Of a DNA stretch of 64,000 nt, positions 28,698 through 63,131 are shown one piece after another. Positions within the stretch are counted from its first letter, which is position 1. Every line of letters begins with the position of its first letter. A program made the translations under genes and the position numbers. The notes beneath the pieces were generated by a model. The model was given only the letters and a program-made list of their open reading frames with translations, was not told the origin of the DNA and made no database searches. The DNA is taken from positions 124,001 to 188,000 of IMG/VR virus record IMGVR_UViG_3300046516_001816, one strand, 5' to 3'.

Positions 28698-28701
28698 TAT
28701 G
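28698..28701 (+). promoter_or_regulatory. Putative late promoter TATG
   Basis: ATTTTATG, 31 nt before ATG 28732. Confidence 0.45.
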
Positions 28702-28731
28702 CATGTCTCAACCACCATAAAAGGGCTCACT

Positions 28732-30348: not shown

Positions 30349-30366
30349 AAACGCATGCTTTTCGTG

Positions 30367-30393
30367 GGGAGCCTTCGGGCTCCCTTTTATTTT
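30367..30393 (+). terminator. Intrinsic terminator (cUUCGg)
   Basis: GGGAGCC-TTCG-GGCTCCC-TTTTATTTT. Confidence 0.8.
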
Positions 30394-30411
30394 GTCTTCA
30401 GGGGTTAAGAC

Positions 30412-31431
30412 ATGGCGGACGGAACGAATCCCGATACCGTACTTACGACCGCGGATTTCTTAGCGGATGTGGCGGCGGTGGCACGACAGTCAGGCTGGGC
30501 AGACCAGTGTGCGACGTCAGCCGCAGCGTCGGCGGCGCAAGCTGAGCTGATTCTCGAACAGATTCTGGGATTGGTGGGCAGTGGTGAGAACTCGGGTCTT
30601 TTGGCCCAGATTCAAGAGGTGGCAAATTCGGCCAGTCAGGCGGCCGCGTCAGCGAGCGCTGCGGCAGCCAGTGCTGCGGCGGCGGCCGCCAGTGTAACCA
30701 GTGCAGCTGCTAAGGTGGGCGATGCCAGCACTCAGGCGAGTAATGCGTCGACGTCTGCAAATGCTGCCGCGGCTTCAGCAACAGCAGCAGCCAACAGTGC
30801 GACTCAAGCAGCAGCGTCCGCCACCGCGGCCAGTGCAGCTTCAGGGTCGGCTACCAGTGCGTCGAACTTTGCGACTGCTGCACAAGCGTCGGCTACAGCA
30901 GCGAACAATTCTGCGACCGCAGCGGCGTCGAGTGCTGCGCAAGCGCAAACCAGCGCCACAGCAGCCCAGACACAAGCTTCGGCTTCTCAGACCAGCGCCA
31001 CGGCCTCCGCAGGCTCCGCGTCGGCGGCCGCGGCTTCGGCGAGTCAGGCCTCGACGGCTGCGGCATCTATTGCGGGTGTCGGACTGAAGTATTTGATCAC
31101 GGCGACCTTGACGGGTACGCTGTCCGCCTCGGAAATCATTCCGTGTCCCGTGACAGTGGCGATTACCTTACCGACGAATCTGTCGGGCTCGCAATTCACG
31201 GCGATCAATAGTGCCACCGCAGCGGTGATTCTGACGCTCTTCCATAACTCGGGGGGCACGTCAACCCCGATTGGGACGGTGACGTTTGCTGCTGGGGCGA
31301 CCAACGGTACCGTGACCTTCACGAATCCCGTGGTCTTTGCCGCCGGCGACTTGCTGGTGATCACGACCCCGAGCACGGCCGATTCGACTTTGGCAAATAT
31401 TGCCATTGGGATTGTCGGCTCGGTGAACTAA
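30412..31431 (+). CDS. Fibre shaft protein with C-terminal adaptor domain (cassette A)
   Basis: Ala/Ser/Thr heptads; C-terminal ...IGTVTFAAGATNGTV...VFAAGDLLVI matches the end of 48296-54367. Confidence 0.85.
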   Translation: MADGTNPDTVLTTADFLADVAAVARQSGWADQCATSAAASAAQAELILEQILGLVGSGENSGLLAQIQEVANSASQAAASASAAAASAAAAAASVTSAAAKVGDASTQASNASTSANAAAASATAAANSATQAAASATAASAASGSATSASNFATAAQASATAANNSATAAASSAAQAQTSATAAQTQASASQTSATASAGSASAAAASASQASTAAASIAGVGLKYLITATLTGTLSASEIIPCPVTVAITLPTNLSGSQFTAINSATAAVILTLFHNSGGTSTPIGTVTFAAGATNGTVTFTNPVVFAAGDLLVITTPSTADSTLANIAIGIVGSVN

Positions 31432-31441
31432 GGAGATCAAG

Positions 31442-32542
31442 ATGGCTTTGTTGTTTTGTGACGGGTTTGATATTTACACCAAAGTCTCGGAGCTCACGGG
31501 TAAGGGCTGGCAGGGCGCGGCGGGCAGCCAGACACTCAATGCGAGTATTGCCCTGTCTGCTTCAGGCAGTCCCTACGGTGGACAATGCATTATCATCGGT
31601 CCCACCGCGAACGGGGTATCGATGTATAAACCCGGGGTGTTTACCTATGCCAATGGCTATACCTTGAACTGTGCGTATATGTACAAGCACACGGGTGGAT
31701 TCCCGAGTCAAAATGAGGGCTCGACGAACGTGGGGGGTTTGCTGCTGCTCGGCTACGATCAGCCCATCGCTGGGCAGTCCGATAGTCGCACGCTGCTCAG
31801 TGTGAATACCACAGGCAAGTTGACCTTTATGCCTTTCGGCGGCAATACGCTGAATGCGACCACGGGCAATATCAATCTTTGCGATGGCGTGTATCACTGG
31901 ATTGAAATGCAGGTGGTACTCACTACTGCGGCGACAGGTTCGGTTAAAGTGTATGTAGATGGGGTATTGGATTTAAACCTCACGAATCTTATCACCGTCA
32001 GCTCCGGCACACCGCAGGGTGAAGTAGGCTTTGGTAGCACGTCCAATAACGGAGCGTTTAGCGTCACGGATTATTACGATGATGTGGTGATGTGGGACAA
32101 TACCGGCACAACGTTCAATACCTTTCCCATTGGTCCGCAACGCATCTATACAGCCACACCCAATGCCGCTGGTGCGCTGTCGCAGTTTACCCCGAGCGCA
32201 GGGGCGAACTACGCGGTGGCTGCGCAGGCGTATTCGGGCGCGGCGTATTTGACAGCCACGGCTGCTGGGCAATCCGATCTGTATGCGACGACCGGACTCG
32301 GGGGCGCGACACCCTCGCAGATTAACGCGGTGGCGGTGAACACCTATGCCAATAATCCGGCAGCGGGATTTCGTAAGCTTCAGAATCTACTGCAATCGAA
32401 GGGCGTCACGGTCTCCGGTCCTTCTTATCAGCTCACTGCCAGCAGTGTGGGCTATCAGACGATTTTTCACACCGATAGCAGCGGCGCGGCGTGGACCACC
32501 ACCACGGTGGCGGGCATGCAGGTGGGCGTGGGAGCAGTGTAA
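31442..32542 (+). CDS. Lectin-like (LamG/ConA-like + jelly-roll) virion head protein (cassette A)
   Basis: N-terminal LFCDGFD; HWIEMQV...VKVYVDG...YYDDVVMWD; C-terminal GAAWT motif; paralog of 54380-62366. Confidence 0.7.
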   Translation: MALLFCDGFDIYTKVSELTGKGWQGAAGSQTLNASIALSASGSPYGGQCIIIGPTANGVSMYKPGVFTYANGYTLNCAYMYKHTGGFPSQNEGSTNVGGLLLLGYDQPIAGQSDSRTLLSVNTTGKLTFMPFGGNTLNATTGNINLCDGVYHWIEMQVVLTTAATGSVKVYVDGVLDLNLTNLITVSSGTPQGEVGFGSTSNNGAFSVTDYYDDVVMWDNTGTTFNTFPIGPQRIYTATPNAAGALSQFTPSAGANYAVAAQAYSGAAYLTATAAGQSDLYATTGLGGATPSQINAVAVNTYANNPAAGFRKLQNLLQSKGVTVSGPSYQLTASSVGYQTIFHTDSSGAAWTTTTVAGMQVGVGAV

Positions 32543-32778
32543 TGGCGACGGATTCCGTAGTCGTGGTGAAGAACTATGCGGAGCTTATTACCGGGGCCTC
32601 GTATAGCTACAGTGCCCATATTCTGAAGTCCTACGCGGATGTGGTTACCCAGCGTGCGCAGTTCCCTTATCAGGCTGCGGTGAGCAAACTCTATGTGGAA
32701 ATTGTCGCGAGTGTTGCACTCACCGTCGGTCCGCCTAAACGACGGATCGTCAAGACGCAGTTGATTCGTGCGCGGTAA
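32542..32778 (+). CDS. Small protein with 3 tandem beta-strand repeats (cassette A scaffold candidate)
   Basis: TAATG coupling; VVVKNYAELIT / HILKSYADVVT / AVSKLYVEIVA. Confidence 0.7.
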   Translation: MATDSVVVVKNYAELITGASYSYSAHILKSYADVVTQRAQFPYQAAVSKLYVEIVASVALTVGPPKRRIVKTQLIRAR

Positions 32779-32781
32779 AGG

Positions 32782-32812
32782 AGCCAGGGGGCAACCCCTG
32801 GCTTTTATGCCG
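32782..32812 (+). terminator. Hairpin (GNRA) + TTTATGCCG element
   Basis: AGCCAGGGG-GCAA-CCCCTGGCT-TTTATGCCG. Confidence 0.8.
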
Positions 32813-32818
32813 GCATTT

Positions 32819-32822
32819 TATG
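32819..32822 (+). promoter_or_regulatory. Putative late promoter TATG
   Basis: ATTTTATG directly after the terminator element. Confidence 0.4.
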
Positions 32823-32826
32823 ATCT

Positions 32827-32985
32827 ATGGTTCTTCTACTGGATGCCCACATGCGCCCTATAAAGTCTCTGGCAACTCTGATGAAACTCATTCGAGAACA
32901 ACAACAAAGACTCTATGGACAGCAGCCTCGCGTGCCGGAGCTGCTCAAGCCGCAAGCACCACCCGACAAGGATAAAGGGAAATGA
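32827..32985 (+). CDS. 52-aa hypothetical protein (not in ORF track)
   Basis: Hand translation MVLLLDAHMRPIKSLATLMKLIREQQQRLYGQQPRVPELLKPQAPPDKDKGK*; ATGA overlap with 32982. Confidence 0.55.
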   Translation: MVLLLDAHMRPIKSLATLMKLIREQQQRLYGQQPRVPELLKPQAPPDKDKGK

Positions 32986-33716: not shown

Positions 33717-33718
33717 AT

Positions 33719-34471: not shown

Positions 34472-34905
34472 AGTTTGCTTTTAAGAAGAACCCGACCGCC
34501 CTTAAGGACAGGTTGATCTGCCTGTGGCGTCACGGGCATTACTACCATTCGGAAGTCATCCTCGCGGAGAATCCGGATGGGACGTACACGATTGCCTCGT
34601 CGGTCCCCGGCGTGGGGGTGCGCACCGCGTACAACCAAACGCTCTCGGCTGATGAGTGGGATATCCTGGACGGTCCGGGGGATCCGGTGCGTGCGGCGGC
34701 CTGGTTCACCGCGCACGACGGCGAAGCCTACGACTGGTTCGGACTGCTCGGTTTCTTTATGAGCCCGATCAAGGACGTGGCGAAGAAGAAGTGGTGGTGC
34801 ACCAATGCAGATATGGAAGCGGCGGGCATGACGCAAGAAAGCTGGCGTTATGATCCGAACCTGCTGGCTGCCACCCTGCGTAATCTCGCGCTCGTTCCGG
34901 CGTAA
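34462..34905 (+). CDS. Permuted papain-like (YaeF/YiiX, NlpC/P60-related) amidase-like protein
   Basis: His motif GHYYHSEV precedes YDWFGLLG and the Cys motif KWWCT (circularly permuted order). Confidence 0.7.
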   Translation: MALKFAFKKNPTALKDRLICLWRHGHYYHSEVILAENPDGTYTIASSVPGVGVRTAYNQTLSADEWDILDGPGDPVRAAAWFTAHDGEAYDWFGLLGFFMSPIKDVAKKKWWCTNADMEAAGMTQESWRYDPNLLAATLRNLALVPA

Positions 34906-34910
34906 TTAAG

Positions 34911-34939
34911 GGGTCGCCTTCGGGCGGCCCTTTATGCCG
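34911..34939 (+). terminator. Hairpin (cUUCGg) + TTTATGCCG element
   Basis: GGGTCGCC-TTCG-GGCGGCCC-TTTATGCCG. Confidence 0.8.
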
Positions 34940-48212: not shown

Positions 48213-48241
48213 GCCCGGGCTTCGGCTCGGGCTTTATGCCC
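48213..48241 (+). terminator. Hairpin (cUUCGg) + TTTATGCCC element
   Basis: GCCCGGGC-TTCG-GCTCGGGC-TTTATGCCC. Confidence 0.75.
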
Positions 48242-48295: not shown

Positions 48296-51200
48296 ATGAC
48301 CGGCAATGTAGATCATCTTACTCACCTCAAGGGTGAAGTGGAACAGCTGGTAGATACGGTGGATGGTCTGGGGGTTGCGTTTAACTTGGCCACGGGTGGA
48401 GACATTGCTGTCTATGCCCAGCAAGCACTCGCAAATGCCGGTCAGGCTCAGACGGCATCAGCAGCCGCGTCCCAGTCCGCTACTACAGCTACTGCCGCTG
48501 CCACACAAACGGCACAAGACGTGATCAACGCCAATGCGGCGGCGACACAGGCCGCGGCTTCCGCAGGCAATGCCGCACAGTCGGCATCGACCGCGGTATC
48601 AGCACAACTCTCGGCGAGCTCCAGCGCAAGCGCAGCATCCAACTCGGCCATTGCCGCGGCGAACTCGGCTTCGACCATGGCCGCATCAGTAACCGCCGCA
48701 GGCAACAGCGCAGCGGCTGCTCACACCAGCGAAACCAATGCCGCGACTTCGGCTAGCGCTGCGCAGTCATCCGCAGCTCAGGTTACGGCGCTGTATAACG
48801 CCTGGGGTCAAGTCTTCCTGGGTGAATTCCCGTCAGATCCCACGCTGGATAATCAAGGCAATGCGCTCATCGATGGCGCGATGTATTTGAACACCACCGA
48901 AGTCCCGCCTGCGATCCGAATCTATACGGCGGGTAAGTGGCAGGACATGGATGAACAGGGCGTGCTGGCATCACAAGCCGCGCAGACTTCGGCTCAGCAA
49001 GCCGCCACGTCGTCCAGTGCAGCCCAGACCTTTGCCGGTACCGCAGCCACCAACGCGGCGGCTGCTAGCACGTCAGCTAATGCAGCAGCGACTTCGGCTA
49101 CGACAGCGTCTGATCTTGCCGGACAAGCAGCGACGTCCGCGACCAATGCGTCTGATTCGGAAATCGCGGCCGCGTCCAGCGCTACGGAAGCAGATGCAGC
49201 GGCAGCGTTGGCGCAAGACTGGGCTTCTAAGTCAGACGGTACGGTGGGTGGGACGGAATTCTTTTCGGCTGCTCACTATGCGCAGGAGGCGGATGCAGCG
49301 AACACCGCGGTGCAAAGCTCGATCTCCAATGCAGCTGCTTTGGGTGGAGCAGCTGCTACGTCGGCCACGCAAGCTGCATCCAGTGCAACTGCGGCTGCTA
49401 CGTCGGCTTCGCAGGCTTCGGGTTCGGCGACAGCCGCCGGTGTCAGTGCAGGTAATGCTGCTAACAGCGCTGCGGCGGCGCAGGCTTCTCAATCGGCAGC
49501 CGCGACCAGTGAAACCAATGCAGCGACGAGTGCGACGCATGCGGCTACCTCCGAAACGAATGCTGCGGCCAGTGCAACGTCGGCCAGTGCAGCGGACACG
49601 GATGCCAAAGCGCAAGCGACCAGTGCCACGACGGCTGCGCAATTGGCAGAAGACTGGGCGACGAAGACGAGTGCCACAGTAGACGGGGTGGAGTATTCGG
49701 CCAAGTACTACGCGAACCAAGCTGTAGCAGCAGACACGGATGCTCAGGCAAAGGCTGCTACGGCTGCAACGTCAGCGACCACCGCTACGACACAAGCCAC
49801 CAATGCTACCAGCAGCGCCACCTTGGCTCAGCAATGGGCAACGAGTGCAACGCTGGTGGCATCGACTGATTATTCGGCGAAGTATTACGCCAATGCAGCA
49901 GGTTCGTCGGCGACTGCCGCTGCAAACAGTGCGTCCTCGATTGCCGCGACGGCCACGGCTGTTGCAGCGAATGCCGCGCTGGCCGCCGCGTGGGCGTCGC
50001 AAGAATCGGGTACGGTGAATGGGACCACGTATTACTCGGCACTGTACTACGCGCTTCAAGCAGCGAATGCCGATACGGATGCTCAAACGCAGGCCACCAA
50101 TGCAGCGACGAGTGCTACGGCAGCTGCCTCCAGCGCTACAAATGCCGCAACATCGGCAAGCAGTCTTCAAAGTGCACTGGCTTCGTTTAGTGCATTGTTC
50201 CTGGGCCCTCATTCCACTCCGCCGACCGTAGACAACCAAGGCAACCCGTTGATCACCGGTGCGCAGTACATGGATTCGTCACAGAGTCCGCCGGTACTGA
50301 ATGAATGGACGGGCTCGGCTTGGGTGGCTGTCTCCAACGATGCTTCGGGCAACGCTCAACTTGCGGCGACTCAAGCGCAGGCGGCAGCGACTTCGGCATC
50401 AGGGAGTGCATCGGCGGCTTCGACGAGCGAATCGAATGCAAGTACTTCCGCCACTAATGCAGCAAATTCTGCAACTGCTGCTGCATCTTCCGCTTCTGCC
50501 AGTGCTGGTAGTGCTACTGCTGCTCAAACGGCTGCTAGCGCCGCACAAGCCGCTGACACGGATGCGACAACGCAAGCAACTAATGCGGGAGCATCTGCAA
50601 CAAGCGCAGCAGGCAGTGCAAGTGCAGCAGGAACTTCAGCAGGTCAGGCAACTGATGCAGCAGCACTTGCTCAAGCTTGGGCAAGCCAGGCAAGCGGAAA
50701 TGTAAACGGTACCGCGTTTGCGTCGGCATTGCAGTATGCGCAACAGGCTTCTAGCTCGGCCACCAGTGCGAGCACGGCAGTAACGCAGTCGCAAGCCAAT
50801 GCAACCCTGGCTCAATCGTGGGCCTCGCAGACCTCGGGTAAGGTCAATAGCAGCAACTATTACTCGGCGTATTACTACGCGACGCAGGCCGCGACGAGTG
50901 CTACTGCCGCTGGCACGAGTGCGACCACAGCTAGCACCGCAGCCACCTCCGCTACAGCGAGTCAAACCGCTGCGGCGACGTCCGCCACCAACGCCGCAGG
51001 CAGCGCGACGACGGCACAAACCGCCGCCACGACGGCGACGAATCAAGCAGCAGCAGCGAGTGCTTCGGCAAGTGCAGCAGCTGCTAGTGATACGGATGCG
51101 ACCACTCAGGCGAGTAATGCAGCAGCCTCGGCAACCACGGCCAGTAATGCCGCGACAACCGCCAGCGCTGCGGCGACCACCGCTACCACACAGGCGACTG

Positions 51201-54200
51201 CTGCGGCACAATCGGCAACGCAAGCAGCAGCATCGGCTACGGCCGCAGCGAGCTCAGCTACCAGTGCAGCATCGAGTGCCACCGCGGCAGCTGCGTCGGC
51301 GACAACGGCTAGCACTCAGGCAGGGAATGCCTCGACCTCGGCAACGAACGCAGCGAATTCTGCTGCTTCTATTCTGGGGCAGACGGGCACGAACCTCGCA
51401 CAAGTGCAAGCCATTCAGGCGCAGTTGAATGCAGCACTGGCGAGTTTTGGTTCCGTGTGGCTGGGTCAGCAAACCAGCGATCCGACGGTGGACTTGAACC
51501 ATCAGCCGATTGCCAATGGAGCGATGTACCAAAATACGTCGACCACGCCACCGGTGATTCGGATCTATGAAGGGGGAGTGTGGCAGGATTGGGATTTGCA
51601 AGGCGAGCAGGCGATGGCCAATGCAACCCTGGCGGCTTCCCAAGCTGCGCAGTCGGCGACCGCTTCGGCCACCAGTGCCCAGACATCGGCCACGGCTGCC
51701 AACACGGCCCTGACGGCGATGAATGCGGCACAGGCAGCCCAGACGGCTGCGCAAAGTGCAGACAGCGACGCAACGACTCAGGCCACCGCAGCAGCCGGGT
51801 CTGCCACCGCAGCAGATGGTTCGGCGCAGCAGGCAGAGTACTTCATGAACCAGGCGATTGCTTGGGCGACCTCGGATAGTGCCAACATTAACTTTTCGAA
51901 TCGGGGTTCGGCGTATTACTACGCGAGCGTAGCGTATAACTACTACGTCGCGATTCAGAACCTGAATTCGAGTGCAGGGACGAGTGCGACCAACGCGGCG
52001 AATAGTGCTAGCGCCGCAGCCGCTTCGTTGTCGTCGATTAACACGCAGTTGTCGCAGTCGGCAGCGAGTGCAACGGCCGCCGCCGCGTCGGCAGCGGATG
52101 CTGCGTCGAGTGCAGGTAACGCCAGCGCATCGGCTTCTGCTTCGGCCAATAGTGCAGCTACGTCGGCTACGCAGTCGTCTAATGCGTCCACGGCAGCGGC
52201 GAATGCCAACAACTCTGCGAATCAAGCGGCCACGAGTGCAACAGCGTCTGCACAATCAGCCACCGATGCGTCGACCTCTGCGTCTCAGGCAGCGGCTTAC
52301 CTGAACGACGTGACGAACCACACGGGTGATGCGTCTCAGTATTCGGCGCTGGCTCAGTCGTGGGCGTCGCAAGGCAGCGGCACGGTAGACGGGACCAGTT
52401 ACTCGGCCTACTACTATGCCAATCAAGCGGGCGTGTCGGCGACGAACGCAGGCAATAGTGCAGCAGGGGCCAGTAGCAGTGCGACTGCGGCAGCGGGCTC
52501 GGAAACGAACTCGGCAGCGTCAGCTGCGTTGGCACAGGCTTGGGCTAGCCAAGGTTCGGGCGTGGTCAATGGGACGAGTAGTTATTCGGCCTTCTACTAC
52601 GCTCAAGCGGCGGCGACGTCAGCGACCAGTGCAGCGAACGCTGTCACCACGGGTAGTCAGTATGTGACGTTGGCAGCTTCATGGGCTTCGCAAGCGACGG
52701 GTAATGTGGATGGTTCGCAATACAAGTCCGCCTTCCAGTACGCTACGCTGGCAGCCGCTTCGCAGCAGACGGCGAGCACCGCAGCGACGAATGCAGCCGG
52801 TAGCGCCACAGCTGCCGCTAGCAGTGCCACCGCAGCGGCCGGTTCGGCGAGTTCAGCAGCGACGTCGCTGGCCAGTCTCCAGGCAGCGTATGCGTCCTTT
52901 ACCAGCACTTGGTTGGGACCGTACAGCACGCCGCCTACCCAGACACCGACGGGTGGGGTGTTGACGATTGGTGCGCAGTACGAAGACACCAGTCAGACTC
53001 CGCCGGTAGTGATGACGTGGGATGGGTCGGTATGGAATCCGCCGAGTGCTGCGGATGCGAGTGCCTCGGCGAACGTCACGTTGGCCGCGGCTCAAGCGCA
53101 GTCTGCCGCAGGTACAGCCGCGACGTCCGCTTCGAATGCGTCGAGCTCAGAAACCAATGCCGCAGCTTCGGCGTCGGCCGCAGCTGCGTCGGCTTCGGCA
53201 GCTGATGCATCCAACACGGCGACCACTGCCAATGCCGCGTTGGCCCAAGCGTGGGCGAGCCAAACGTCTGGGAAAGTGAATGGTACGCAGTCGTATTCCG
53301 CGTACTACTACATGCTTCAGGCGCAGTCAGCTCTGAATAGTGTCCAGGCCTCGCAGACGGACGTGGATGCCAAACAAACGCAGGCAGACGCGAGTGCGTC
53401 CCTTGCCATGGCGTGGGCGTCGCAAAGCACGGGCGTGGTGAACAATACGCAGTACTATTCGGCGTATTACTACGCACAGCAGGCGCTGTCGGCTAACACC
53501 TCGGCTCAGTCAGCGCTGACGACGATTCAAGCAGCAGTGGCGCAGGCTCAAACTGCGGCCACCCAAGCGACCAATCTCGTGTCAGGCCCGAGCGGGTCGG
53601 CTAACTACTACTCGACGCAAGCGGCGAACTCCGCCACGACCGCGAGTACGGCAGCTACCAATGCACAAACCAGTGCATCGGCTGCGGCGACGTCTGCCGC
53701 GAATGCAGCTGCCGCAGCACAACAGGTGTTGACTAATTCGAATGCAGCCAGTACCAGTGCAACGAATGCGTCGAACAGTGCAACTGCTGCGGCAGGTAGT
53801 GCCACAGCTGCGCAGGGGAGCGCCACGGCAGCGAATACGTCAAAGACTAATGCAGCTACGTCAGCGACCGCTGCCGCAGGCAGTGCCAGTGCTGCTGCGG
53901 GGTCCGCCACGCAAGCGGCCAATAGTGCCACGTCCGCTACCAGTAGTGCGACCGCTGCCAGTAGTTCGGCCACGGCAGCGGCCGCCAGTGCCGCTAAGGC
54001 GCTGGTCAACGCGCGGATCTCGTGCTCCGTCACGGGTAATCCGAACGTGTTTCAAGAAGTGAAGTATCCGTTTGCGGGCGACACCTGTACGTTTGATACG
54101 AACTTTGGGCCTTCCGCAGCCATCTGTACGTTTATGGAAGGCACGAGTGCGACGGTGAATGTGTTGGCGTATAACGCGGCTCACCCGACTGGGGTGGTCG

Positions 54201-54367
54201 TGGGCACGCTCACGTTCACGCAAACGACAGGCAATAGCGGCACGGGTGTGTTTAGTTCAGTCTCGAGTACGACGACGGTGTTTAATCCGGGTGACACGAT
54301 TTCGTTGTTGCCGGTGAGCACCAATCTCGCCTCGATGGCTGTGACGTTTAAGGGTAGCTACAGTTAA
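48296..54367 (+). CDS. Very long fibre shaft (2023 aa) with 4 knob domains, 12 WAS..YSA.YYA knuckles and a C-terminal adaptor domain (cassette B)
   Basis: Ala/Ser/Thr heptads throughout; C-terminal VGTLTFTQ...VFNPGDTISL matches the end of 30412. Confidence 0.9.
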   Translation: MTGNVDHLTHLKGEVEQLVDTVDGLGVAFNLATGGDIAVYAQQALANAGQAQTASAAASQSATTATAAATQTAQDVINANAAATQAAASAGNAAQSASTAVSAQLSASSSASAASNSAIAAANSASTMAASVTAAGNSAAAAHTSETNAATSASAAQSSAAQVTALYNAWGQVFLGEFPSDPTLDNQGNALIDGAMYLNTTEVPPAIRIYTAGKWQDMDEQGVLASQAAQTSAQQAATSSSAAQTFAGTAATNAAAASTSANAAATSATTASDLAGQAATSATNASDSEIAAASSATEADAAAALAQDWASKSDGTVGGTEFFSAAHYAQEADAANTAVQSSISNAAALGGAAATSATQAASSATAAATSASQASGSATAAGVSAGNAANSAAAAQASQSAAATSETNAATSATHAATSETNAAASATSASAADTDAKAQATSATTAAQLAEDWATKTSATVDGVEYSAKYYANQAVAADTDAQAKAATAATSATTATTQATNATSSATLAQQWATSATLVASTDYSAKYYANAAGSSATAAANSASSIAATATAVAANAALAAAWASQESGTVNGTTYYSALYYALQAANADTDAQTQATNAATSATAAASSATNAATSASSLQSALASFSALFLGPHSTPPTVDNQGNPLITGAQYMDSSQSPPVLNEWTGSAWVAVSNDASGNAQLAATQAQAAATSASGSASAASTSESNASTSATNAANSATAAASSASASAGSATAAQTAASAAQAADTDATTQATNAGASATSAAGSASAAGTSAGQATDAAALAQAWASQASGNVNGTAFASALQYAQQASSSATSASTAVTQSQANATLAQSWASQTSGKVNSSNYYSAYYYATQAATSATAAGTSATTASTAATSATASQTAAATSATNAAGSATTAQTAATTATNQAAAASASASAAAASDTDATTQASNAAASATTASNAATTASAAATTATTQATAAAQSATQAAASATAAASSATSAASSATAAAASATTASTQAGNASTSATNAANSAASILGQTGTNLAQVQAIQAQLNAALASFGSVWLGQQTSDPTVDLNHQPIANGAMYQNTSTTPPVIRIYEGGVWQDWDLQGEQAMANATLAASQAAQSATASATSAQTSATAANTALTAMNAAQAAQTAAQSADSDATTQATAAAGSATAADGSAQQAEYFMNQAIAWATSDSANINFSNRGSAYYYASVAYNYYVAIQNLNSSAGTSATNAANSASAAAASLSSINTQLSQSAASATAAAASAADAASSAGNASASASASANSAATSATQSSNASTAAANANNSANQAATSATASAQSATDASTSASQAAAYLNDVTNHTGDASQYSALAQSWASQGSGTVDGTSYSAYYYANQAGVSATNAGNSAAGASSSATAAAGSETNSAASAALAQAWASQGSGVVNGTSSYSAFYYAQAAATSATSAANAVTTGSQYVTLAASWASQATGNVDGSQYKSAFQYATLAAASQQTASTAATNAAGSATAAASSATAAAGSASSAATSLASLQAAYASFTSTWLGPYSTPPTQTPTGGVLTIGAQYEDTSQTPPVVMTWDGSVWNPPSAADASASANVTLAAAQAQSAAGTAATSASNASSSETNAAASASAAAASASAADASNTATTANAALAQAWASQTSGKVNGTQSYSAYYYMLQAQSALNSVQASQTDVDAKQTQADASASLAMAWASQSTGVVNNTQYYSAYYYAQQALSANTSAQSALTTIQAAVAQAQTAATQATNLVSGPSGSANYYSTQAANSATTASTAATNAQTSASAAATSAANAAAAAQQVLTNSNAASTSATNASNSATAAAGSATAAQGSATAANTSKTNAATSATAAAGSASAAAGSATQAANSATSATSSATAASSSATAAAASAAKALVNARISCSVTGNPNVFQEVKYPFAGDTCTFDTNFGPSAAICTFMEGTSATVNVLAYNAAHPTGVVVGTLTFTQTTGNSGTGVFSSVSSTTTVFNPGDTISLLPVSTNLASMAVTFKGSYS

Positions 54368-54379: not shown

Positions 54380-55501
54380 ATGAGCGCCACTCCGCAGTTT
54401 ATCGTCGGTGCTGAAGGTCTGGATCTCTATGCAGCCGGCGTCCTGGGGAATAAGTTCCCTTGGTTCCAGACCAATGCGACCTACCAAGGTCAAGTAGTAG
54501 CAGGCGCGGGCGTGTTCGGCGGCAATGGCCTCTCGTTCGCTGTAGCGGCAGCCAATCAGTCGGGCATGGAGTACCAGTTCCCCTCCACCATGCAGGTGAT
54601 GAAAAATCAGGTGGCAGCAGGGGGCAAAGGTGCATTTGGAGTGTGTGGGTGGGTTAAAATCGGCACCCCGGTGGCAACAGGGACCGATATTCTGTTAGCA
54701 CTGGGGTCGTCGGCTAATCCGGCGGCAGCCTTGCCTTTGCTGGGGCTGAACAACGCCACCGCGAGTGGGTTGAGTTTGGTGCTGCCGTCGACCACGGCCA
54801 ATCTGGTGTCGGCACCGCACTTGCTTGCCATTAACCCGAATAGCGCGTTGTGGGTCGGGGTGTATTTTTCGTACACGCCGAACGCGAATGGGACACTGAC
54901 CGGCACACTGTGTCTGTCGGGCTCAGGCATCTACCAGGATGTGCCGATTACCTTTAGTACCGATATCTTTACCGCGGGGCAGTTGTGTAACCGTCTGCGC
55001 TTTTACTCCGGGGTGGTGGCACCCTGGACGCTGGATGACATGATCATTCATGCGGTCTCGAATGCAGACACGCTCTGGCCCGCGCCGACGACGCTGAACC
55101 CGGAAGTGATTCCGCAGTATCTGCCGCGTCAAATCTCGCTGGCCACTGCCACGGGTCCGGGCAGTAAGGCGGACATGACGCCCTCGGGCAGCGAACCAAA
55201 CTGGCAATCGGCGACCGATCAAACGGGCGCGAATTCCGTGATTGCCACCGCCATTAACCAGACGGACACGTATAAGTGGAGTACGACGGCCACGGATATC
55301 AAAGCCGTGGTCTACCGAGGTCAGAGTGAGAAGTACAGTCAGTTGAGCGCTGTGCAGTTGGTGGGCGCGACCCAGAGCACGATGGGCTTGACCGAAGCGG
55401 GGCCGAATGATTTCATTGGCATTTCCGAAAACGACGGCGCGGCGCAGTGGACGGCGACCTCAGTGGCAGCGGCTGAGTTCGGTCAGACCTCGCATAACTA
55501 A
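54380..55501 (+). CDS. Lectin-like virion head protein, short type (paralog of 31442)
   Basis: SD AAGGA; GAEGLDLY N-terminus; WTLDDMII; C-terminal GAAQWTATSV. Confidence 0.7.
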   Translation: MSATPQFIVGAEGLDLYAAGVLGNKFPWFQTNATYQGQVVAGAGVFGGNGLSFAVAAANQSGMEYQFPSTMQVMKNQVAAGGKGAFGVCGWVKIGTPVATGTDILLALGSSANPAAALPLLGLNNATASGLSLVLPSTTANLVSAPHLLAINPNSALWVGVYFSYTPNANGTLTGTLCLSGSGIYQDVPITFSTDIFTAGQLCNRLRFYSGVVAPWTLDDMIIHAVSNADTLWPAPTTLNPEVIPQYLPRQISLATATGPGSKADMTPSGSEPNWQSATDQTGANSVIATAINQTDTYKWSTTATDIKAVVYRGQSEKYSQLSAVQLVGATQSTMGLTEAGPNDFIGISENDGAAQWTATSVAAAEFGQTSHN

Positions 55502-55509: not shown

Positions 55510-57795
55510 ATGACCGCTTTATTGATGGAAGGGTTTGAGAGCGTCATTGACACGCCGGACCTGACGAACCGCGGATGGAAGATGTCCAGCATGGCGTCGT
55601 CGAATGGCGCCAATACCATGACCTTGCCTTCGCGCACGGGCATGCCGGGTAGAGGATTGTTTTTGCGGGGCCCGTACAACTCTAATACGACCAACCTGCC
55701 GTTTGCCAATGCGGTGGATTTCGGGATGCTCGATACCGGTGCGTCCATTTATAGTCTCTGGCAGTCAGGCGGATTTTGTTTGGGCGTGAATGCCGTGTTT
55801 AACAAGGCGAACATGGTCCAGATCGCGAACTACATGACGCGTCAGATCGTGTACGATGGAGCGCAGTACTACTGGGCCCTGGGTCAGGACAATAGCAATG
55901 TGTGGCGGGTGTACTACTCCACGGACTTGCAGAACTGGACACAGACAACCATCACGCCCGGCAGCGCTGCCTTGGGTTCATCGATTACGGTGATCGGCAG
56001 CGGACCGAGCGCCACCGTGATTGTCGGAGGGTTTCTCATCAGCACCACGGCTGCGTTTTACTACTCGACCAATATGGGACTGGCCTGGACGGCGAGTAAC
56101 GCCACCGGGATCTCGGGCTCCAAGACAGTGATCGCCACGGGCAACGTCAACACTCCCATTATGTTCGGGGCCCAGCCCAGTAGTGGCGCGAACGGCGTTT
56201 TCTATCTGAGCAGTGTGTCAGGCGCGCCGGTGCAGGTGGCAGGCTTGGCGCTCACGGCCTCGAGCACGTATAACTCGGGTAACTCCAAGTTGGTGAATGG
56301 GATAGCGTGCTTTATCGCCTCCTCGGGTACAACGTCCCCGGCCGCCTTGACGACTAATGCGTCTATCGTGGCATGCTGTCCGGTGTCCAAAGACATGACG
56401 ATAGCGGCCAACTATACGTTGACGCCTTCGCTGGCGCATCAGTTGGCCGATATCACGTTCCTCAATAACACGTGGATCGCTGTAGGGCATGGCGGGATTT
56501 ATACGTCCCCCAATAGTGGTACGGTGGGTGCGCCGGCGGGCCCGACTGCTGCGTGGTCGACGGCACTGGCGGTGACACAAAACGGCGGCGTGTATTCGAT
56601 CGATACGAACGGTACGGTGGCCGTGGCCGTGGGTAATGATAACGTGAGCTCGGTAATTCCGGCCATCTATACGTCGACCGATGGCGTGAGTTGGGCGAAA
56701 CAGAATCGTCTTACCTTCACCACCGCCAACAACGTCGCGAACACGCAGCCGTTTACCAACGTCTTCTGGGACGGTCATCAGTTTGTGCTGACGGGTGGTG
56801 TGAGTAATAGCGTGGTGGCGACTTCACCGGATGGTTTTCAGTGGACGCCGCAGTACGTGCCCGACTACACGGAGTCGTCGGGGGGGTCCGTGGCCTCGAT
56901 GCTGGGTGTGTATTCCGGTGTGATGAACGCCGGCGCGTGGGTCGGTGCAAGTCAGGCCGCGGGCGGTTTTGCTCCGTGGACGACGGGGGCGGCCGCCCAA
57001 TGTGGGGTGGGACTGTTAGCCGGTCCAGTCAGTAATGGCGCCCGCAACGTGAGTGCCTGGTTGGTACCTGGCGGGACGACGACGAGCGCGATCGTAGCCA
57101 TTTCCTCGATGAGTGCCGCGGTACCGACCAACCCGTTGTCGCACTACTACGAGCTGATTGCCACGGCCACCGCGAGTGTGAACACCTTTACGTTCCAGCT
57201 CGCCATTGATGGCGTCGTGCAACCGGCACTCAGTCCGCCCGTTCAGTTTGCGGCCACGGGCGACACCACCGGTGCGTCGCATCTGATTTTCAACCTTCCG
57301 CGCTCAGGCAACTGGGTGATGGTGGATGACCTTTATTTGACGAACTTCTCAGGCTCAAATAACGTGGGTCAACTGGGTGTCACCAGTGTGTTGCCGTGGG
57401 TGCCCTCCAGTGATGTACAGGCGCAGTATAACCGAACGGCGGGATCGTCTAACGCCTCGCAAGTCGTGGGTCCGCTCTCCAATGCTCAGACGAGCGTTAA
57501 TGCTCAAGCGGTGGGGGCGAAGGATATCTACGGCATGACCACTAGCGTGCCAGTCGGCTATCGCGTGCGCGCCATGCAGGCAGAAGCCTACTTTTCGAAG
57601 TTTGGTGCCACGGGGGCAGCCGCAACGGTCGGCATTGTCAGTAACGGCGCGGAAAGCGATTCGGCGCAAGCGAACGCGGCGACTAGCACGCCCGTGTATG
57701 CCTCGGTCCTGTGCGACACCGATCCGAAGACGGGTGCTGCCTGGACGGTAGCGGCTGCACAGGCGGCGGAGATTGCGATCGTCAAAGCAACTTAA
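55510..57795 (+). CDS. Lectin-like virion head protein with inserted beta-propeller (long type 1)
   Basis: MEGFE N-terminus; YSTDL..WT, STNMG..W, STDG..W, SPDG..W (BNR/Asp-box-like) repeats; DPKTGAAWT C-terminus. Confidence 0.8.
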   Translation: MTALLMEGFESVIDTPDLTNRGWKMSSMASSNGANTMTLPSRTGMPGRGLFLRGPYNSNTTNLPFANAVDFGMLDTGASIYSLWQSGGFCLGVNAVFNKANMVQIANYMTRQIVYDGAQYYWALGQDNSNVWRVYYSTDLQNWTQTTITPGSAALGSSITVIGSGPSATVIVGGFLISTTAAFYYSTNMGLAWTASNATGISGSKTVIATGNVNTPIMFGAQPSSGANGVFYLSSVSGAPVQVAGLALTASSTYNSGNSKLVNGIACFIASSGTTSPAALTTNASIVACCPVSKDMTIAANYTLTPSLAHQLADITFLNNTWIAVGHGGIYTSPNSGTVGAPAGPTAAWSTALAVTQNGGVYSIDTNGTVAVAVGNDNVSSVIPAIYTSTDGVSWAKQNRLTFTTANNVANTQPFTNVFWDGHQFVLTGGVSNSVVATSPDGFQWTPQYVPDYTESSGGSVASMLGVYSGVMNAGAWVGASQAAGGFAPWTTGAAAQCGVGLLAGPVSNGARNVSAWLVPGGTTTSAIVAISSMSAAVPTNPLSHYYELIATATASVNTFTFQLAIDGVVQPALSPPVQFAATGDTTGASHLIFNLPRSGNWVMVDDLYLTNFSGSNNVGQLGVTSVLPWVPSSDVQAQYNRTAGSSNASQVVGPLSNAQTSVNAQAVGAKDIYGMTTSVPVGYRVRAMQAEAYFSKFGATGAAATVGIVSNGAESDSAQANAATSTPVYASVLCDTDPKTGAAWTVAAAQAAEIAIVKAT

Positions 57796-62376: not shown

Positions 62377-62991
62377 ATGACCACAGGTGTATACGCCCAA
62401 GGGGTCAATGGCCAGTATCTTGCCCAGCAGATCACCTCCGTGCGCATTGGCGGGGTGAATGGACAAGTGCTGGCGCAGTTTTCCCCGAAGTCGGTAAAGA
62501 CGCGTGCGACTAACGGTCAGATGTTGGTGTCAGCCCCCAGTGCCATTAATGTCCAGGCAGTCAATGGTCAGGTACTGGCGTATCGGTCAGGCGTGAAAGC
62601 ATCAGGCGCCGGCATACAGGTGATGACCAAAGCCAAAGGTGCGGTGATTTCACAAGGCGTCGGCGTCCAGGTACTGCTGAAGCAGCCGGGGGGTGTGGAA
62701 GTCATTCGTGCTAACATGCAGGTGTTGGTGCGTTCACGCTCTGCAATGCAAGCCCAGGCTGTGGGCGGGCAGATGCTGGTGAGTAAGCTGCTGGATGTGC
62801 GTACGACCCAAGTCATGATGGAAGTGATTGGGGAAGTGCCGCCATACTTACCGGTCACTGGGGTGAACCTGGAAGTCATCGGGGCAGGGTTCCCGGCGGC
62901 TCCCCTGAAGCAAGTGACGCTCGAAGTGATTGGCGCCACGACCCTTCCGTACCAGAGCCCTGGACAGACGGTCACGTGGTGGAGCAGCTAA
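62377..62991 (+). CDS. Protein of 11 tandem ~17-aa beta-strand repeats (cassette B scaffold candidate)
   Basis: SD AAGGAGG; repeats such as GVNGQYLA, GVNGQVLA, AVNGQVLA, GVGVQVLL, QVMMEVIG, GVNLEVIG, QVTLEVIG. Confidence 0.8.
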   Translation: MTTGVYAQGVNGQYLAQQITSVRIGGVNGQVLAQFSPKSVKTRATNGQMLVSAPSAINVQAVNGQVLAYRSGVKASGAGIQVMTKAKGAVISQGVGVQVLLKQPGGVEVIRANMQVLVRSRSAMQAQAVGGQMLVSKLLDVRTTQVMMEVIGEVPPYLPVTGVNLEVIGAGFPAAPLKQVTLEVIGATTLPYQSPGQTVTWWSS

Positions 62992-63099: not shown

Positions 63100-63131
63100 C
63101 CCACGCCCTTTGCCGGGTGTGGGCCTTTTTT
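63100..63131 (+). terminator. Intrinsic terminator
   Basis: CCCACGCCC / GGGTGTGGG stem, then CCTTTTTT. Confidence 0.65.

What the first reader, a model, noticed from the sequence alone, without database searches (positions are those of the whole stretch)
30412..32778. The same three-part cassette occurs twice, and scaffold repeat number scales with head number
Seen: cassette A = shaft 30412-31431, one head 31442-32542 and a 3-repeat ORF 32542-32778 (VVVKNYAELIT, HILKSYADVVT, AVSKLYVEIVA). Cassette B = shaft 48296-54367, four heads and an 11-repeat ORF. Both shafts end in a homologous ~115-aa domain found on no other shaft here (A: IGTVTFAAGATNGTV..VFAAGDLLVI; B: VGTLTFTQTTGNSGTGV..VFNPGDTISL). 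Each cassette is bounded by terminators. Three repeats for one head type suggests a trimer. Four heads would predict 12 repeats but I count 11, so the rule is approximate. Inference: a modular, expandable system (shaft adaptor + heads + strand scaffold) for building multivalent branched fibre tips; I do not recognise it as described.
Basis: partly seen in the sequence, partly recalled or inferred. Interest (0 to 1): 0.8.

Follow-up and report, generated by a model that had tools for sequence, protein, structure and literature searches.

The report
Modular phage fibre-tip head cassettes
Two operons in this jumbo-phage tail region each encode a fibre shaft, one or more lectin-like "head" proteins and a small protein made of tandem beta-strand repeats. 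The same undescribed three-part kit recurs in many unrelated phages, and there the number of repeats rises with the number of head genes.

Summary
Cassette A holds a shaft, one head and a 78-aa 3-repeat ORF. Cassette B holds a shaft, a 373-aa head paralogue, three 750-760-aa heads and a 204-aa 11-repeat ORF. Both lie between terminator-like hairpins. Both shafts end in a homologous ~115-aa domain (hhalign 96%, E 2.5e-9) that no other ORF in the window has.

The same order, shaft C-domain then head(s) then repeat ORF, recurs in about 25 loci. These include Burkholderia jumbo phages (BcepSaruman/Sauron, BCSR5), GTA-like siphophage prophages, a Mesorhizobium phage, a megaphage and a Firmicute prophage.

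Heads are ConA-like lectin/lyase jelly rolls plus a beta-sandwich (AF2 pLDDT 92). The small ORF belongs to an uncharacterised family with at least 132 clusters. It is not confidently folded alone. Elsewhere it is fused to lectin domains or to baseplate hub/Dit proteins.

Repeat number rises with head number: rho 0.89 per phage, and about 3 'QVL' repeats per large head per ORF. It is not a strict 3n rule; single-head loci have 2-4 repeats.

Best reading: the repeat protein is a structural connector. Its C-terminal strand goes with the shaft domain and its repeats go with the heads. Binding is inferred, not shown. I found no description of it in Pfam, NCBIfam, PHROGs, PDB sequences or the paper library.

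The parts
30366..30385 (+). Terminator-like hairpin (8-bp GC-rich stem, TTCG loop, T-run) upstream of cassette A
30412..31431 (+). Shaft A, 339 aa: Ala/Ser-rich fibre repeats, then the ~115-aa C-terminal 'docking' domain (nt 31069-31428)
   Evidence: ORF. phrog_7049 'tail fiber protein' hits the C-terminal domain. shaftC_S HMM E 7e-41. Alignment A7.
31442..32542 (+). Small head, 366 aa, starts MALLFCDGFD. N-terminal ConA-like lectin/lyase jelly roll plus C-terminal beta-sandwich; no N-terminal anchor or coiled coil.
   Evidence: phrog_2448 E 2e-26. AF2 pLDDT 91.6, pTM 0.90. Foldseek against PDB and BFVD. Only 36 clusters in 5.8e9 proteins.
32542..32778 (+). Small repeat protein, 78 aa. Three beta-strand repeats of KxYAEϕϕT type at nt 32560-32592, 32617-32649 and 32677-32709. 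Basic C-terminal strand (KRRIVKTQLIR) at nt 32737-32769. Start overlaps the head stop (TAATG).
   Evidence: AF2 alone gives low confidence.
32784..32801 (+). Hairpin CCAGGGG-GCAA-CCCCTGG followed by CTTTTAT; terminator-like end of cassette A
   Evidence: Read from the sequence. The scan lists overlapping weaker sites.
48213..48232 (+). Hairpin GCCCGGGC-TTCG-GCTCGGGC followed by TTTATGCCCTTT, upstream of cassette B
   Evidence: Read from the sequence; not called by the consensus scan.
48296..54367 (+). Shaft B, 2023 aa Ala/Ser-rich fibre ending in the large-type version of the same C-terminal domain (nt 54005-54364)
   Evidence: shaftC_B HMM E 1.6e-54. hhalign A7 vs A8 96%, E 2.5e-9. No Pfam domain.
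54380..55501 (+). 373-aa head paralogue ('373-type'), single copy in every large-type cassette seen
   Evidence: (small-head HMM E 2.7e-9 over the full length)
55510..57795 (+). Large head 1, 761 aa: small-head fold with a ~450-aa insertion that carries Asp-box-like motifs (e.g. YSTDLxNWT; seen by eye, fold not tested)
   Evidence: phrog_30887 E 4e-76 and phrog_2448 on residues 513-755. Small-head HMM hits residues 1-62 and 543-755.
57810..60071 (+). Large head 2, 753 aa (44-46% identical to head 1)
60081..62366 (+). Large head 3, 761 aa (45-46% identical to head 1)
62377..62991 (+). Large-type repeat protein, 204 aa: 8 'GQVL' repeats + 3 'LEVIG' repeats with a 17-aa period, then C-terminal VTWWSS
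   Evidence: z=12.7. Weak phrog_13560 hit. ESM Atlas model pTM 0.59 resembles beta-solenoids.
63100..63123 (+). Strong terminator-like hairpin (9-bp stem, T-run) after cassette B

Best explanation
Each cassette is one transcription unit that builds the receptor-binding tip of one tail fibre from three kinds of part.

1. A fibrous shaft (presumably trimeric) whose last ~115 residues form a conserved docking domain.
2. One or more globular heads. Each is a ConA-like lectin or polysaccharide-lyase-type jelly roll plus a beta-sandwich, and the large heads carry an added insertion. The heads begin directly with the first strand of the jelly roll and have no attachment domain of their own.
3. A small protein made of tandem ~17-21-residue beta-strand repeats that acts as the connector. 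Its C-terminal hydrophobic strand anchors it to the shaft's docking domain, and its repeats are the sites that hold the heads.

Adding head genes goes with adding repeats, about three 'QVL' repeats per large head. In this way one fibre can carry several different lectin or depolymerase heads.

Shown: the parts, their folds or families, their conserved order, the co-variation and the fusions.

Inferred: that the small protein is in the virion, that its repeats contact the heads, that its C-strand contacts the shaft domain, and any stoichiometry.
For: Conserved synteny. Shaft C-domain, then head(s), then repeat ORF, across jumbo phages, GTA-like siphophage prophages of Burkholderiaceae, Mesorhizobium phage Cp1R7A-A1 and a Pelotomaculum prophage. 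The ORF is translationally coupled to the head gene (TAATG).

Heads. Confident two-domain lectin-like model. The extreme N-terminus is conserved (M1, A2, D10), with no anchor domain.

The small protein looks structural, not only a chaperone.
- In the same gene slot it can carry its own N-terminal F5/8-C, LamG or SPRY-like domain (P0041, P0148, P0126 etc.).
- Similar repeats (seen by eye; below the repeat-profile threshold) lie N-terminal to a baseplate hub in Tetraselmis viridis virus S20 (LamG + 4 repeats + PF09931/PF09356).
- A profile hit, P0104, carries repeats N-terminal to a DUF2460 Dit-like domain.

Separation of roles.
- TvV-S20 has a head gene, and its repeats sit on the hub. Its whole genome lacks the shaft C-domain, and the repeat stretch has no free C-terminal strand.
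- L026 keeps heads and repeats, has no shaft C-domain nearby, and its repeat ORF has a different C-terminus.
- In L011, a shaft with the small-type C-domain is followed by unrelated 676-924-aa heads (starting MTIWYLDPEGGNDSN) and by small ORFs. These have different repeats (WGFDGEP) but the same kind of C-terminal strand.

Co-variation of numbers. Large type: rho 0.89 per phage (n=9), slope 3.1. Per ORF, QVL repeats per large head are 3,3,3,3,2,3,4,3,4,2.7,3.5 (rho 0.85, permutation p 0.002).

Folding. AF2 gives only low confidence for the small ORF alone (pLDDT 66, pTM 0.38), as expected for a protein ordered only in a complex.
Against: - No direct evidence of any contact: no multimer model, no proteomics and no structure.
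- Repeat counts are not a fixed multiple of heads. One head goes with 2, 3 or 4 repeats; two heads with 3, 4, 5 and 5.
- L046 has 18 repeats for 3 heads.
- L008 has 8 QVL repeats for 2 large heads, against 8 for 3 in the window.
- In L022 a large head is not followed by a repeat ORF.
- The loci are few and phylogenetically related, so the correlations overstate independence.
- The ESM Atlas models the 204-aa ORF as an autonomous beta-solenoid, which would not need partners to fold.
- No natural head-repeat or shaft-repeat fusion was found.
Confidence: 0.5

Rival explanations
1. The repeat protein is a self-contained fibrous element that extends or caps the fibre tip. It would be either a monomeric beta-solenoid with one rung per 17-21-aa repeat, or a trimeric beta-spiral like adenovirus or reovirus shafts. 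Heads attach to it or to the shaft in some other way. Repeat number sets length, not a number of docking sites, and co-varies with head number only because a bigger cluster needs a longer platform.
For: Regular 17-aa period with Gly/Pro at the turns. The ESM Atlas model of the 204-aa ORF (pTM 0.59) matches beta-solenoid families (DUF4097, DUF3060, BigA_N and a viral collagen+DUF7666 cluster) at TM 0.7-0.87. Repeat counts are not exact multiples of heads. In the fusions the repeats sit like a stalk between a lectin domain and an anchor.
Against: Three- or two-repeat versions (54-78 aa) are too short for a stable solenoid. AF2 with a 43-sequence alignment does not fold the 78-aa ORF (pLDDT 66; ESM pLDDT 0.46). 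The solenoid look-alikes come from a moderate-confidence single-chain model, and no solenoid Pfam family is hit by sequence. This reading does not explain why about 3 QVL repeats per large head recur in 8 single-head ORFs.
Confidence: 0.25
2. The small ORF is a non-structural assembly chaperone. Like lambda Tfa, T4 gp38/gp57A or Mu U, it is encoded just downstream of the receptor-binding genes. Its repeats transiently template folding or oligomerisation of the heads, and it is absent from the virion.
For: It is a small gene immediately downstream of the head genes and translationally coupled to them. It is not confidently folded alone. Three repeats would suit templating a trimer.
Against: Homologous modules are fused to lectin-like domains and to baseplate hub and Dit proteins, which are virion parts. 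The C-terminal strand co-varies with the shaft's C-terminal domain. There is no similarity to any Tfa or chaperone family in Pfam, NCBIfam or PHROGs. Another fibre in the same window uses the classical self-cleaving Peptidase_S74 chaperone instead.
Confidence: 0.12
3. The gene order is conserved only because the whole tail-fibre block is inherited together. The small ORFs have an unrelated role (for example host-surface binding of their own), or some are not genes at all.
For: Several of the small ORFs are unannotated or uncalled in public records (BcepSaruman; Pelotomaculum). High-GC genomes carry many spurious ORFs.
Against: The trio recurs in phages that share nothing else: jumbo myovirus-like phages, GTA-like siphophages, a low-GC megaphage and a Firmicute prophage. 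The small ORF is conserved as protein, with 132 clusters at E<1e-3 and best E 1e-25. In a decaying Trinickia prophage the head and the small ORF are both disrupted.
Confidence: 0.03

Closest known systems
Branched multi-RBP tail-spike systems (CBA120 TSP1-4, G7C gp63.1/gp66, SP6/K1-5 adaptors, Klebsiella phiK64-1) - from my own knowledge
   Same: One phage carries several receptor-binding modules, encoded side by side and joined through dedicated attachment elements. Gene number expands and contracts between relatives.
   Different: In those systems each spike is a trimer with its own N-terminal adaptor domain, and branching is by domain-domain docking. Here the heads have no adaptor domain. 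The candidate connector is a separate small protein of tandem beta-strand repeats, plus a C-terminal domain on the shaft.
[quoted passage not shown]
   Same: In the siphophage versions the cassette follows DUF2460, hub, NlpC/P60, Phage-tail_3+Rcc01698_C genes. That is the place where RDJL-phi-1 has its Rcc00171 homologue (PMC5026251). The Mesorhizobium phage shaft carries DUF2793. The RcGTA baseplate is three-fold symmetric (PMC7296036).
   Different: The RcGTA fibre ends in its own lectin-like 'foot' domain. Here the fibre ends in a ~115-aa domain, and separate head and repeat genes follow. The window's shafts give no DUF2793 hit.
Tail fibre assembly proteins (lambda Tfa, Mu U, T4 gp38)
   Same: A small gene directly downstream of the receptor-binding gene. 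Some of them stay on the fibre tip.
   Different: No sequence relation. The protein here has a tandem-repeat architecture, a variable repeat number, and fusions to baseplate proteins.
Beta-solenoid / triple beta-spiral repeat shafts (DUF4097-like proteins; adenovirus fibre and reovirus sigma1 repeats)
   Same: Short (15-20 aa) repeats of alternating hydrophobic residues with Gly/Pro turns. The ESM model of the 204-aa ORF superposes on solenoid clusters.
   Different: The resemblance rests only on one moderate-confidence model. There is no sequence-family match, and the short members are not predicted to fold.
ConA-like lectin / polysaccharide lyase (PL7/14/20/36-type) jelly rolls; Vibrio cholerae sialidase lectin domain
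   Same: The N-terminal domain of the head has this fold (Foldseek E 4e-8 to 1e-5, probability 1.0). One homologue carries PF14099.
   Different: TM-scores normalised to the targets are only 0.45-0.6. No catalytic residues were examined. The full two-domain arrangement matches only uncharacterised phage proteins in BFVD (TM 0.7-0.8).
Donor-strand complementation in chaperone-usher pili (analogy only)
   Same: The idea that a short beta-strand supplied in trans completes or extends the sheet of a globular subunit and so strings subunits together.
   Different: Purely an analogy for how the repeats might hold heads. No homology, and not tested here.

Membership tests
PHROG phrog_2448 / phrog_30887 (phage proteins of unknown function) - heads | Significant full-length match to the family HMM | tested here: met
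   Small head against phrog_2448: E 2e-26, residues 2-363. Large heads against phrog_30887: E 3e-56 to 3e-82, full length.
Concanavalin A-like lectin/glucanase fold - head N-terminal domain | Jelly-roll sandwich superposable on solved ConA-like domains | tested here: met
   AF2 model pLDDT 91.6. Foldseek PDB hits to TtX122, the sialidase lectin domain, PL lyases, calreticulin and legume lectins at probability 1.0, E down to 4e-8.
Pfam Laminin_G_3 / other named lectin or lyase families - heads | Sequence match above the Pfam gathering threshold | tested here: not met
   No Pfam family for any of the five heads and no NCBIfam match. Only one distant homologue carries PF14099.
Polysaccharide lyase / depolymerase activity of heads | Conserved catalytic residues in the cleft; activity on host polysaccharide | not tested
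   Only fold resemblance was obtained. Active sites were not compared.
Shaft C-terminal docking domain (this work; partly phrog_7049 'tail fiber protein') | ~115-aa C-terminal domain with the ...IGT(V/I)xF...AAGD...(T)N/ADxTLxxIxxxLxG motifs, at the end of a fibre protein and followed by head genes | tested here: met
   Both window shafts meet it: HMM E 7e-41 and 1.6e-54, and no other window ORF. The two classes are homologous (hhalign 96%). It is present upstream of heads in 10 other loci.
DUF2793 / Rcc00171-type tail fibre - shafts | Pfam PF10983 match | tested here: not met
   Window shafts A and B and fibre 28699-30348 have no PF10983 hit. The homologous-position shaft of Mesorhizobium phage Cp1R7A-A1 does (E 7e-18).
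Small beta-strand-repeat protein family (this work; phrog_13560, unknown function) | 2-22 tandem repeats of ~17-21 aa with a core ϕ-x-ϕ-(E/Q)-ϕ-ϕ, usually a terminal hydrophobic strand, encoded next to head genes | tested here: met
   The 78-aa ORF is one of the nine sequences the profile was built from (E 7e-24, self-inclusive). Independent members score down to E 1e-21, and there are 132 clusters in all. The 204-aa ORF gives a weak phrog_13560 hit (E 1e-3) and shares its architecture with the large-type ORFs of 9 phages.
Tail fibre assembly chaperones (Tfa/gp38-type) | Sequence membership in a Tfa family; absence from, or tip-binding on, the mature fibre | tested here: not met
   No Pfam, NCBIfam or PHROG chaperone family is hit by either repeat ORF or by 8 relatives. 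Virion presence is not testable here.
Beta-solenoid proteins (DUF4097/DUF2807-like) | Sequence match to the family, or a confident stacked-coil model | tested here: inconclusive
   No Pfam hit. The ESM Atlas model of the 204-aa ORF (pTM 0.59) resembles them at TM 0.66-0.87. The 78-aa ORF is not folded by AF2.
Branched tailspike systems with T4 gp10-like adaptor domains (CBA120-type) | N-terminal adaptor (XD/gp10-like) domains on trimeric spikes | tested here: inconclusive
   The heads start directly with the jelly roll, and no Pfam or PHROG hit suggests adaptor domains. No specific model of those domains was searched.

The most novel reading that the evidence does not exclude
A single small polypeptide of tandem beta-strand repeats is a 'valency ruler' for phage adhesins. 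Each group of about three repeats captures one lectin head (a trimer, or three monomers) by beta-strand augmentation. A terminal strand plugs the string into a dedicated domain at the end of the fibre, or the string is fused directly to the baseplate hub or Dit. Duplicating a head gene together with a few repeats would then add a new specificity to the same fibre. This would be a previously undescribed assembly principle, shared by jumbo phages, GTA-like siphophages and prophages of Proteobacteria and Firmicutes.
Probability: 0.25. Interest if true: 0.8.

Novelty: new variant of a known kind. Interest (0 to 1): 0.62.

Why it matters
Receptor-binding tips decide phage host range, and modular tips are the main handle for retargeting phages and for predicting hosts from sequence.

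This cassette would be a compact, widely transferred kit with three parts: a docking domain, anchor-less lectin or depolymerase heads, and a repeat connector. It seems to let one fibre carry from one to seven different heads.

All three parts are 'hypothetical proteins' in current annotation, and the small ORF is often not called at all. Such tips are therefore invisible to present RBP-prediction tools.

If the repeat-to-head relation holds, it gives a rule, readable from sequence, for how many heads a fibre carries. It would also be a new example of how a symmetry or stoichiometry problem is solved by an internally repeated chain.

If instead the repeat protein is only a spacer or chaperone, the finding is still a useful annotation of a recurrent, uncharacterised tail-fibre module.

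Tried and rejected
- Megablast of the cassette against 50,697 phage records found nothing. Relatives are detectable only at protein level.
- Pfam and NCBIfam on all parts gave nothing usable.
- PDB sequence search with head profiles gave only chance hits.
- The first genome-contig scan failed because the pattern was too narrow. The second found only 3 loci. The metagenome scan found 6, mostly short, contigs. The families are therefore rare in these collections and the data set stays small.
- I looked for a 'Rosetta stone' fusion of the repeat module to a head or to the shaft domain, which would have allowed a single-chain AF2 test of the contact. None was found among 132 hits. The fusions are to other lectin-like domains and to baseplate proteins.
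- AF2 of the small ORF alone was uninformative (pLDDT 66). No multimer prediction is available here.
- Regex counting of repeats mis-registers in several ORFs, so the counts in the report are manual and guided by the 17-21-aa period.
- Hypotheses rejected by the data: 'the 3 LEVIG repeats belong to the single 373-type head' (L011 and L046 have LEVIG triplets after heads without a 373-type gene, and L010 has one LEVIG repeat); '2n+1 repeats' for the small type (fails for 1:2, 1:4, 2:3 and 2:4); '6 repeats per large head' (fails for the window and L010).
- A Trinickia locus that looked like a head-repeat fusion is a decayed prophage with a truncated head and a frameshifted small ORF.
- Literature searches (BcepSaruman, BCSR5, DUF2793, Rcc00171, CbK cryo-EM, strand complementation) found no description of the cassette. 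The library does not cover most subscription journals.
Full report
WHERE THE WINDOW COMES FROM

The window is bases 124,001-188,000 of IMG/VR contig IMGVR_UViG_3300046516_001816, a 284,983-bp jumbo phage. This stretch is a long tail and tail-fibre module:
- a phrog_2871 tail protein at 25896-28640;
- many Ala/Ser-rich 'tail fiber' ORFs;
- one fibre (38986-45579) with a classical Peptidase_S74 self-cleaving chaperone.

Its closest cultured relatives are the Burkholderia jumbo phages BcepSaruman, BcepSauron and BCSR5, at 30-42% amino-acid identity for the heads. A 74-kb contig of Caballeronia arationis LMG 29324 is syntenic with window positions ~30.4-37 kb, with 61% identity for the head. This points to a Burkholderiaceae host.

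Gene spacing is tight: 8-14 nt between genes, and the small ORF of cassette A overlaps the head stop as TAATG. Each cassette lies between terminator-like hairpins: 30366-30385, 32784-32801, 48213-32 and 63100-63123. Each therefore looks like one transcription unit.

The 204-aa ORF has an unmistakable 17-residue period (z=12.7). It holds eight 'GQVL' units followed by three 'LEVIG' units and a C-terminal VTWWSS. The three units of the 78-aa ORF are only marginal by self-comparison (z=1.9), but the family confirms them.

The two shafts' last ~115 residues are not significantly similar pairwise. As profiles they are homologous (hhalign 96%, E 2.5e-9). No other ORF in the window has the domain.

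The 373-aa protein is a diverged head paralogue. The 750-760-aa heads are the small-head fold with a ~450-residue insertion between its N-terminal strands and its C-terminal half. By eye the insertion carries Asp-box-like motifs; its fold was not tested.

THE SAME KIT ELSEWHERE

Small type (shaft with C-domain, ~340-370-aa head(s), small ORF):
- BcepSaruman and BcepSauron. In Saruman the 72-aa ORF is unannotated (L001 9041-9259).
- BCSR5, with two heads.
- Three IMG/VR prophage-like contigs, a B. pseudomallei prophage and two metagenome contigs. In these the trio follows a GTA-like tail tip (DUF2460, hub PF09931+PF09356, NlpC/P60, Phage-tail_3+Rcc01698_C) and precedes the lysis genes.
- Caballeronia, and a 'Vulcanococcus' MAG contig.
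- Mesorhizobium phage Cp1R7A-A1, with a DUF2793 shaft and two heads.
- A 595-kb megaphage, with two heads and a divergently transcribed 80-aa 4-repeat ORF.
- Brevundimonas phage Domovoi, where three repeats sit at the end of a Gly-rich protein just upstream of the head.
- A Pelotomaculum (Firmicute) prophage whose 80-aa 4-repeat ORF was not called.

An HMM scan shows the order shaft C-domain, head, repeat ORF in every locus with enough flanking DNA.

Large type (shaft, 373-type head, 670-1000-aa heads, long repeat ORF) occurs in nine phages: the window, L008, L010, L011, L012, L013, L046, Sauron/Saruman and BCSR5. Fragments occur in L018, L020 and L022.

WHAT THE PARTS ARE

Head.
- AF2 with a 35-sequence alignment gives pLDDT 91.6 and pTM 0.90.
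- The N-terminal domain is a ConA-like jelly roll. The nearest solved structures are lectin domains and polysaccharide lyases.
- The whole two-domain fold matches only uncharacterised phage virion proteins (TM 0.7-0.8), including Achromobacter, Serratia, Vibrio, Sphingomonas and Chi-like phages.
- The sequence family is rare: 36 clusters in 5.8 billion proteins.
- Heads begin with the invariant M-A-x-ϕ-ϕ-x-(D/E)-G-(F/W)-(D/E) strand and have no anchoring domain.

Small ORF.
- A profile search of 1.84 billion representatives finds 132 clusters (best E 1e-25).
- Most are 50-110-aa proteins with 2-6 repeats of (R/K)-ϕ-(S/T)-(Q/K)-x-(Y/F/A)-x-E-ϕ-ϕ and a terminal strand such as RPVICxCT.
- The only library family is phrog_13560, function unknown.
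- Alone it is not confidently folded (AF2 pLDDT 66; ESM 0.46).
- The ESM Atlas model of the 204-aa ORF (pTM 0.59) looks like a beta-solenoid.

Informative fusions.
- (i) F5/8-C, LamG or SPRY-like domain + three repeats + terminal strand. These sit exactly in the small-ORF slot after a normal head (P0041 in L031, P0148 in L032).
- (ii) LamG + four similar repeats (seen by eye; below the repeat-profile threshold) + baseplate hub in Tetraselmis viridis virus S20, with the head gene just upstream.
- (iii) Repeats + DUF2460 (Dit-like) in P0104.
- No fusion to a head or to the shaft domain was found.

WHICH PART GOES WITH WHICH

Three natural 'swaps' separate the roles.
- The TvV-S20 genome has a head, and repeats on the hub, but no shaft C-domain anywhere and no free C-terminal strand.
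- L026 has two heads and three repeats, but no shaft C-domain nearby. Its repeat ORF ends in a long unrelated tail instead of the strand.
- In L011, a shaft with the small-type C-domain is followed by unrelated 676-924-aa heads and by 66-68-aa ORFs. Their repeats are different (WGFDGEP) but they end in the same kind of strand (IQILM, PIVMICM).

The large-type shafts (…SYQF…TN…) go with …VTWF/WWSS ends. The small-type shafts (…AAGDϕLxϕTN…ADATL…) go with PVIxxCT or basic-strand ends.

So the repeats track the heads, and the terminal strand tracks the shaft domain. This is comparative inference, not a demonstrated contact.

Large type, per phage, as total heads : total repeats:
- 2:6 (Saruman/Sauron, BCSR5, L012, L013)
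- 3:11 (L011, two ORFs)
- 3:12 (L008)
- 3:18 (L046, two ORFs)
- 4:11 (window)
- 7:22 (L010)

Spearman is 0.89 and the slope 3.1 repeats per head.

Per ORF, I counted only QVL-type repeats against the large heads encoded since the previous repeat ORF. The ratios are 3,3,3,3,2,3,4,3,4,2.7,3.5 (rho 0.85, permutation p 0.002). The LEVIG-type repeats are a separate, roughly constant block: mode 3, range 1-6.

Small type: one head goes with 3 repeats in 10 loci, 2 in one and 4 in three. Two heads go with 3, 4, 5 and 5 (rho 0.55).

Repeat number therefore scales with head number, and 'about three per head' is the central tendency. It is not a strict stoichiometric code. The loci are few and related, so the p-values are optimistic.

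MECHANISM

Best-supported reading (confidence about 0.5):
- The small protein is a structural connector of the fibre tip.
- Its terminal strand is anchored on the shaft's C-terminal domain, or is replaced by covalent fusion to a baseplate protein.
- Its repeats hold the anchor-less lectin or lyase heads.
- Cassette A would then make a simple tip with one head type. Cassette B would make a composite tip with four head types on a very long (2023-aa) shaft.

A count of about three repeats per head fits either one trimeric head or three monomeric heads per head gene. The compact, high-confidence monomer model does not decide between these.

Rivals:
- an autonomous beta-solenoid or beta-spiral stalk (0.25);
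- a non-structural chaperone (0.12);
- no functional link (0.03).

COMPARISON WITH WHAT IS KNOWN, AND NOVELTY

Functionally this belongs with modular and branched receptor-binding systems (CBA120, G7C, SP6/K1-5; my own knowledge). In siphophages it occupies the position of the RcGTA/RDJL-phi-1 tail fibre (PMC5026251, PMC7296036). It differs in three ways:
- the heads have no adaptor domain;
- the shaft ends in a dedicated small domain;
- a tandem-strand-repeat protein, whose repeat number varies with head number, is the third constant partner.

None of the three parts has a Pfam or NCBIfam family or a solved homologue detectable by sequence. I found no paper describing the arrangement, but the library is incomplete.

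I rate it a new variant of a known kind (a phage receptor-binding tip with accessory connector). There is a 0.25 chance that it embodies a new assembly principle.

LIMITS

- No multimer modelling, proteomics or structure was available.
- Repeat counts are manual.
- Head counts assume that all heads of a cassette are encoded contiguously.
- Several contigs are truncated (L018, L020, L022).
- The sample is dominated by Burkholderiaceae phages.

Noticed in passing
L001 9041-9259 (BcepSaruman MK552140, between BcepSaruman_270 and _269): An unannotated 72-aa ORF with three KxYxEVVT repeats and a PVICICT end fills a 230-nt 'intergenic' gap. The homologous ORF is present in BcepSauron (L007 10654-10872). 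Similar small ORFs were also uncalled in the Pelotomaculum prophage (L027 6970-7212).
   Followed up: yes
L017 (Caballeronia arationis LMG 29324, NZ_FCOG02000034.1, 74 kb), whole locus vs window 30400-37000: This bacterial assembly contig carries a block syntenic with the window: shaft, head (61% identity), 3-repeat ORF, then homologues of window 32982-33716, 33719-34471, 34462-34905 and 34973-35512. It is either a related (pro)phage or phage DNA in the assembly. It hints at a Burkholderiaceae host.
   Followed up: partly
L011 13434-22087: A third kind of cassette. A shaft with the small-type C-domain is followed by three unrelated heads of 676, 691 and 924 aa (two start MTIWYxDPEGGNDSN). Two 66-68-aa ORFs are interspersed, with different repeats (WGFDGEP x2 in the 68-aa ORF) but the same type of C-terminal strand. 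A similar 'MAVFYIDPEFGNDANNG' protein sits next to a head in the T7-like Variovorax phage VPv81 (L028).
   Followed up: partly
L029 4745-6508 (Tetraselmis viridis virus S20, TVGG_00031): The annotated start at 5009 looks 5'-truncated. The frame is open from just after the head's stop, and the longer product has a full Laminin_G_3 domain before the repeats and the hub domains. The 'algal virus' has an ordinary GTA-like phage tail module (DUF2460, hub, Phage-tail_3).
   Followed up: partly
L015 8335-10126 (Trinickia sp. MAG): A decaying copy of cassette A. The head lacks its N-terminal part and is fused in frame to unrelated sequence. The small ORF is split by a frameshift: two repeats lie in one frame, and the third repeat plus the RRVICACT end lie in another.
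   Followed up: partly
window 38986-45579: A 2197-aa fibre in the same window ends in a Peptidase_S74 intramolecular chaperone domain (E 4.5e-10). The phage therefore uses at least two different solutions for finishing its fibres.
   Followed up: no
window 55510-62366 (large heads), e.g. motifs YSTDLxNWT, TSTDGVSWxK, SPDGFQWTP: The ~450-aa insertion in the large heads carries repeated Asp-box-like (S-x-D-x-G-x-x-W) motifs, suggestive of a sialidase/BNR-type beta-propeller. There are only weak sub-threshold Pfam hits (GH43, KIB1-4 propeller). Propeller-only matches occur in long proteins of other viral contigs (L047, L050).
   Followed up: partly
window 63110-63550; L008 15390-15773; L010 16370-16756; L018 6925-7311: A conserved ~130-146-aa protein (ending ...YVFSGRC...) follows the long repeat ORF in the window and its closest relatives. 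In the Saruman/BCSR5/L011/L012/L022 group a different conserved ~92-103-aa protein takes that place. Function unknown.
   Followed up: no
window 28699-30348, 32982-33716, 34973-35512, 37725-38891, 45632-47053, 47053-48207: At least six further fibre-like genes. Four are Ala/Ser-rich (28699-30348, 32982-33716, 34973-35512, 37725-38891), and five of the six hit 'tail fiber' PHROGs (32982-33716 does not). None carries the cassette's shaft C-terminal domain. The phage appears to carry many distinct fibres.
   Followed up: partly
P0019's contig (ENA ERZ1759910, 279,983 bp; no DNA available): The gene-size pattern suggests four cassettes in a row: 380/725/121 aa; 391/333/119 aa; 350/56 aa; 354/91 aa. 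It would be a good extra data point for the counting test.
   Followed up: no
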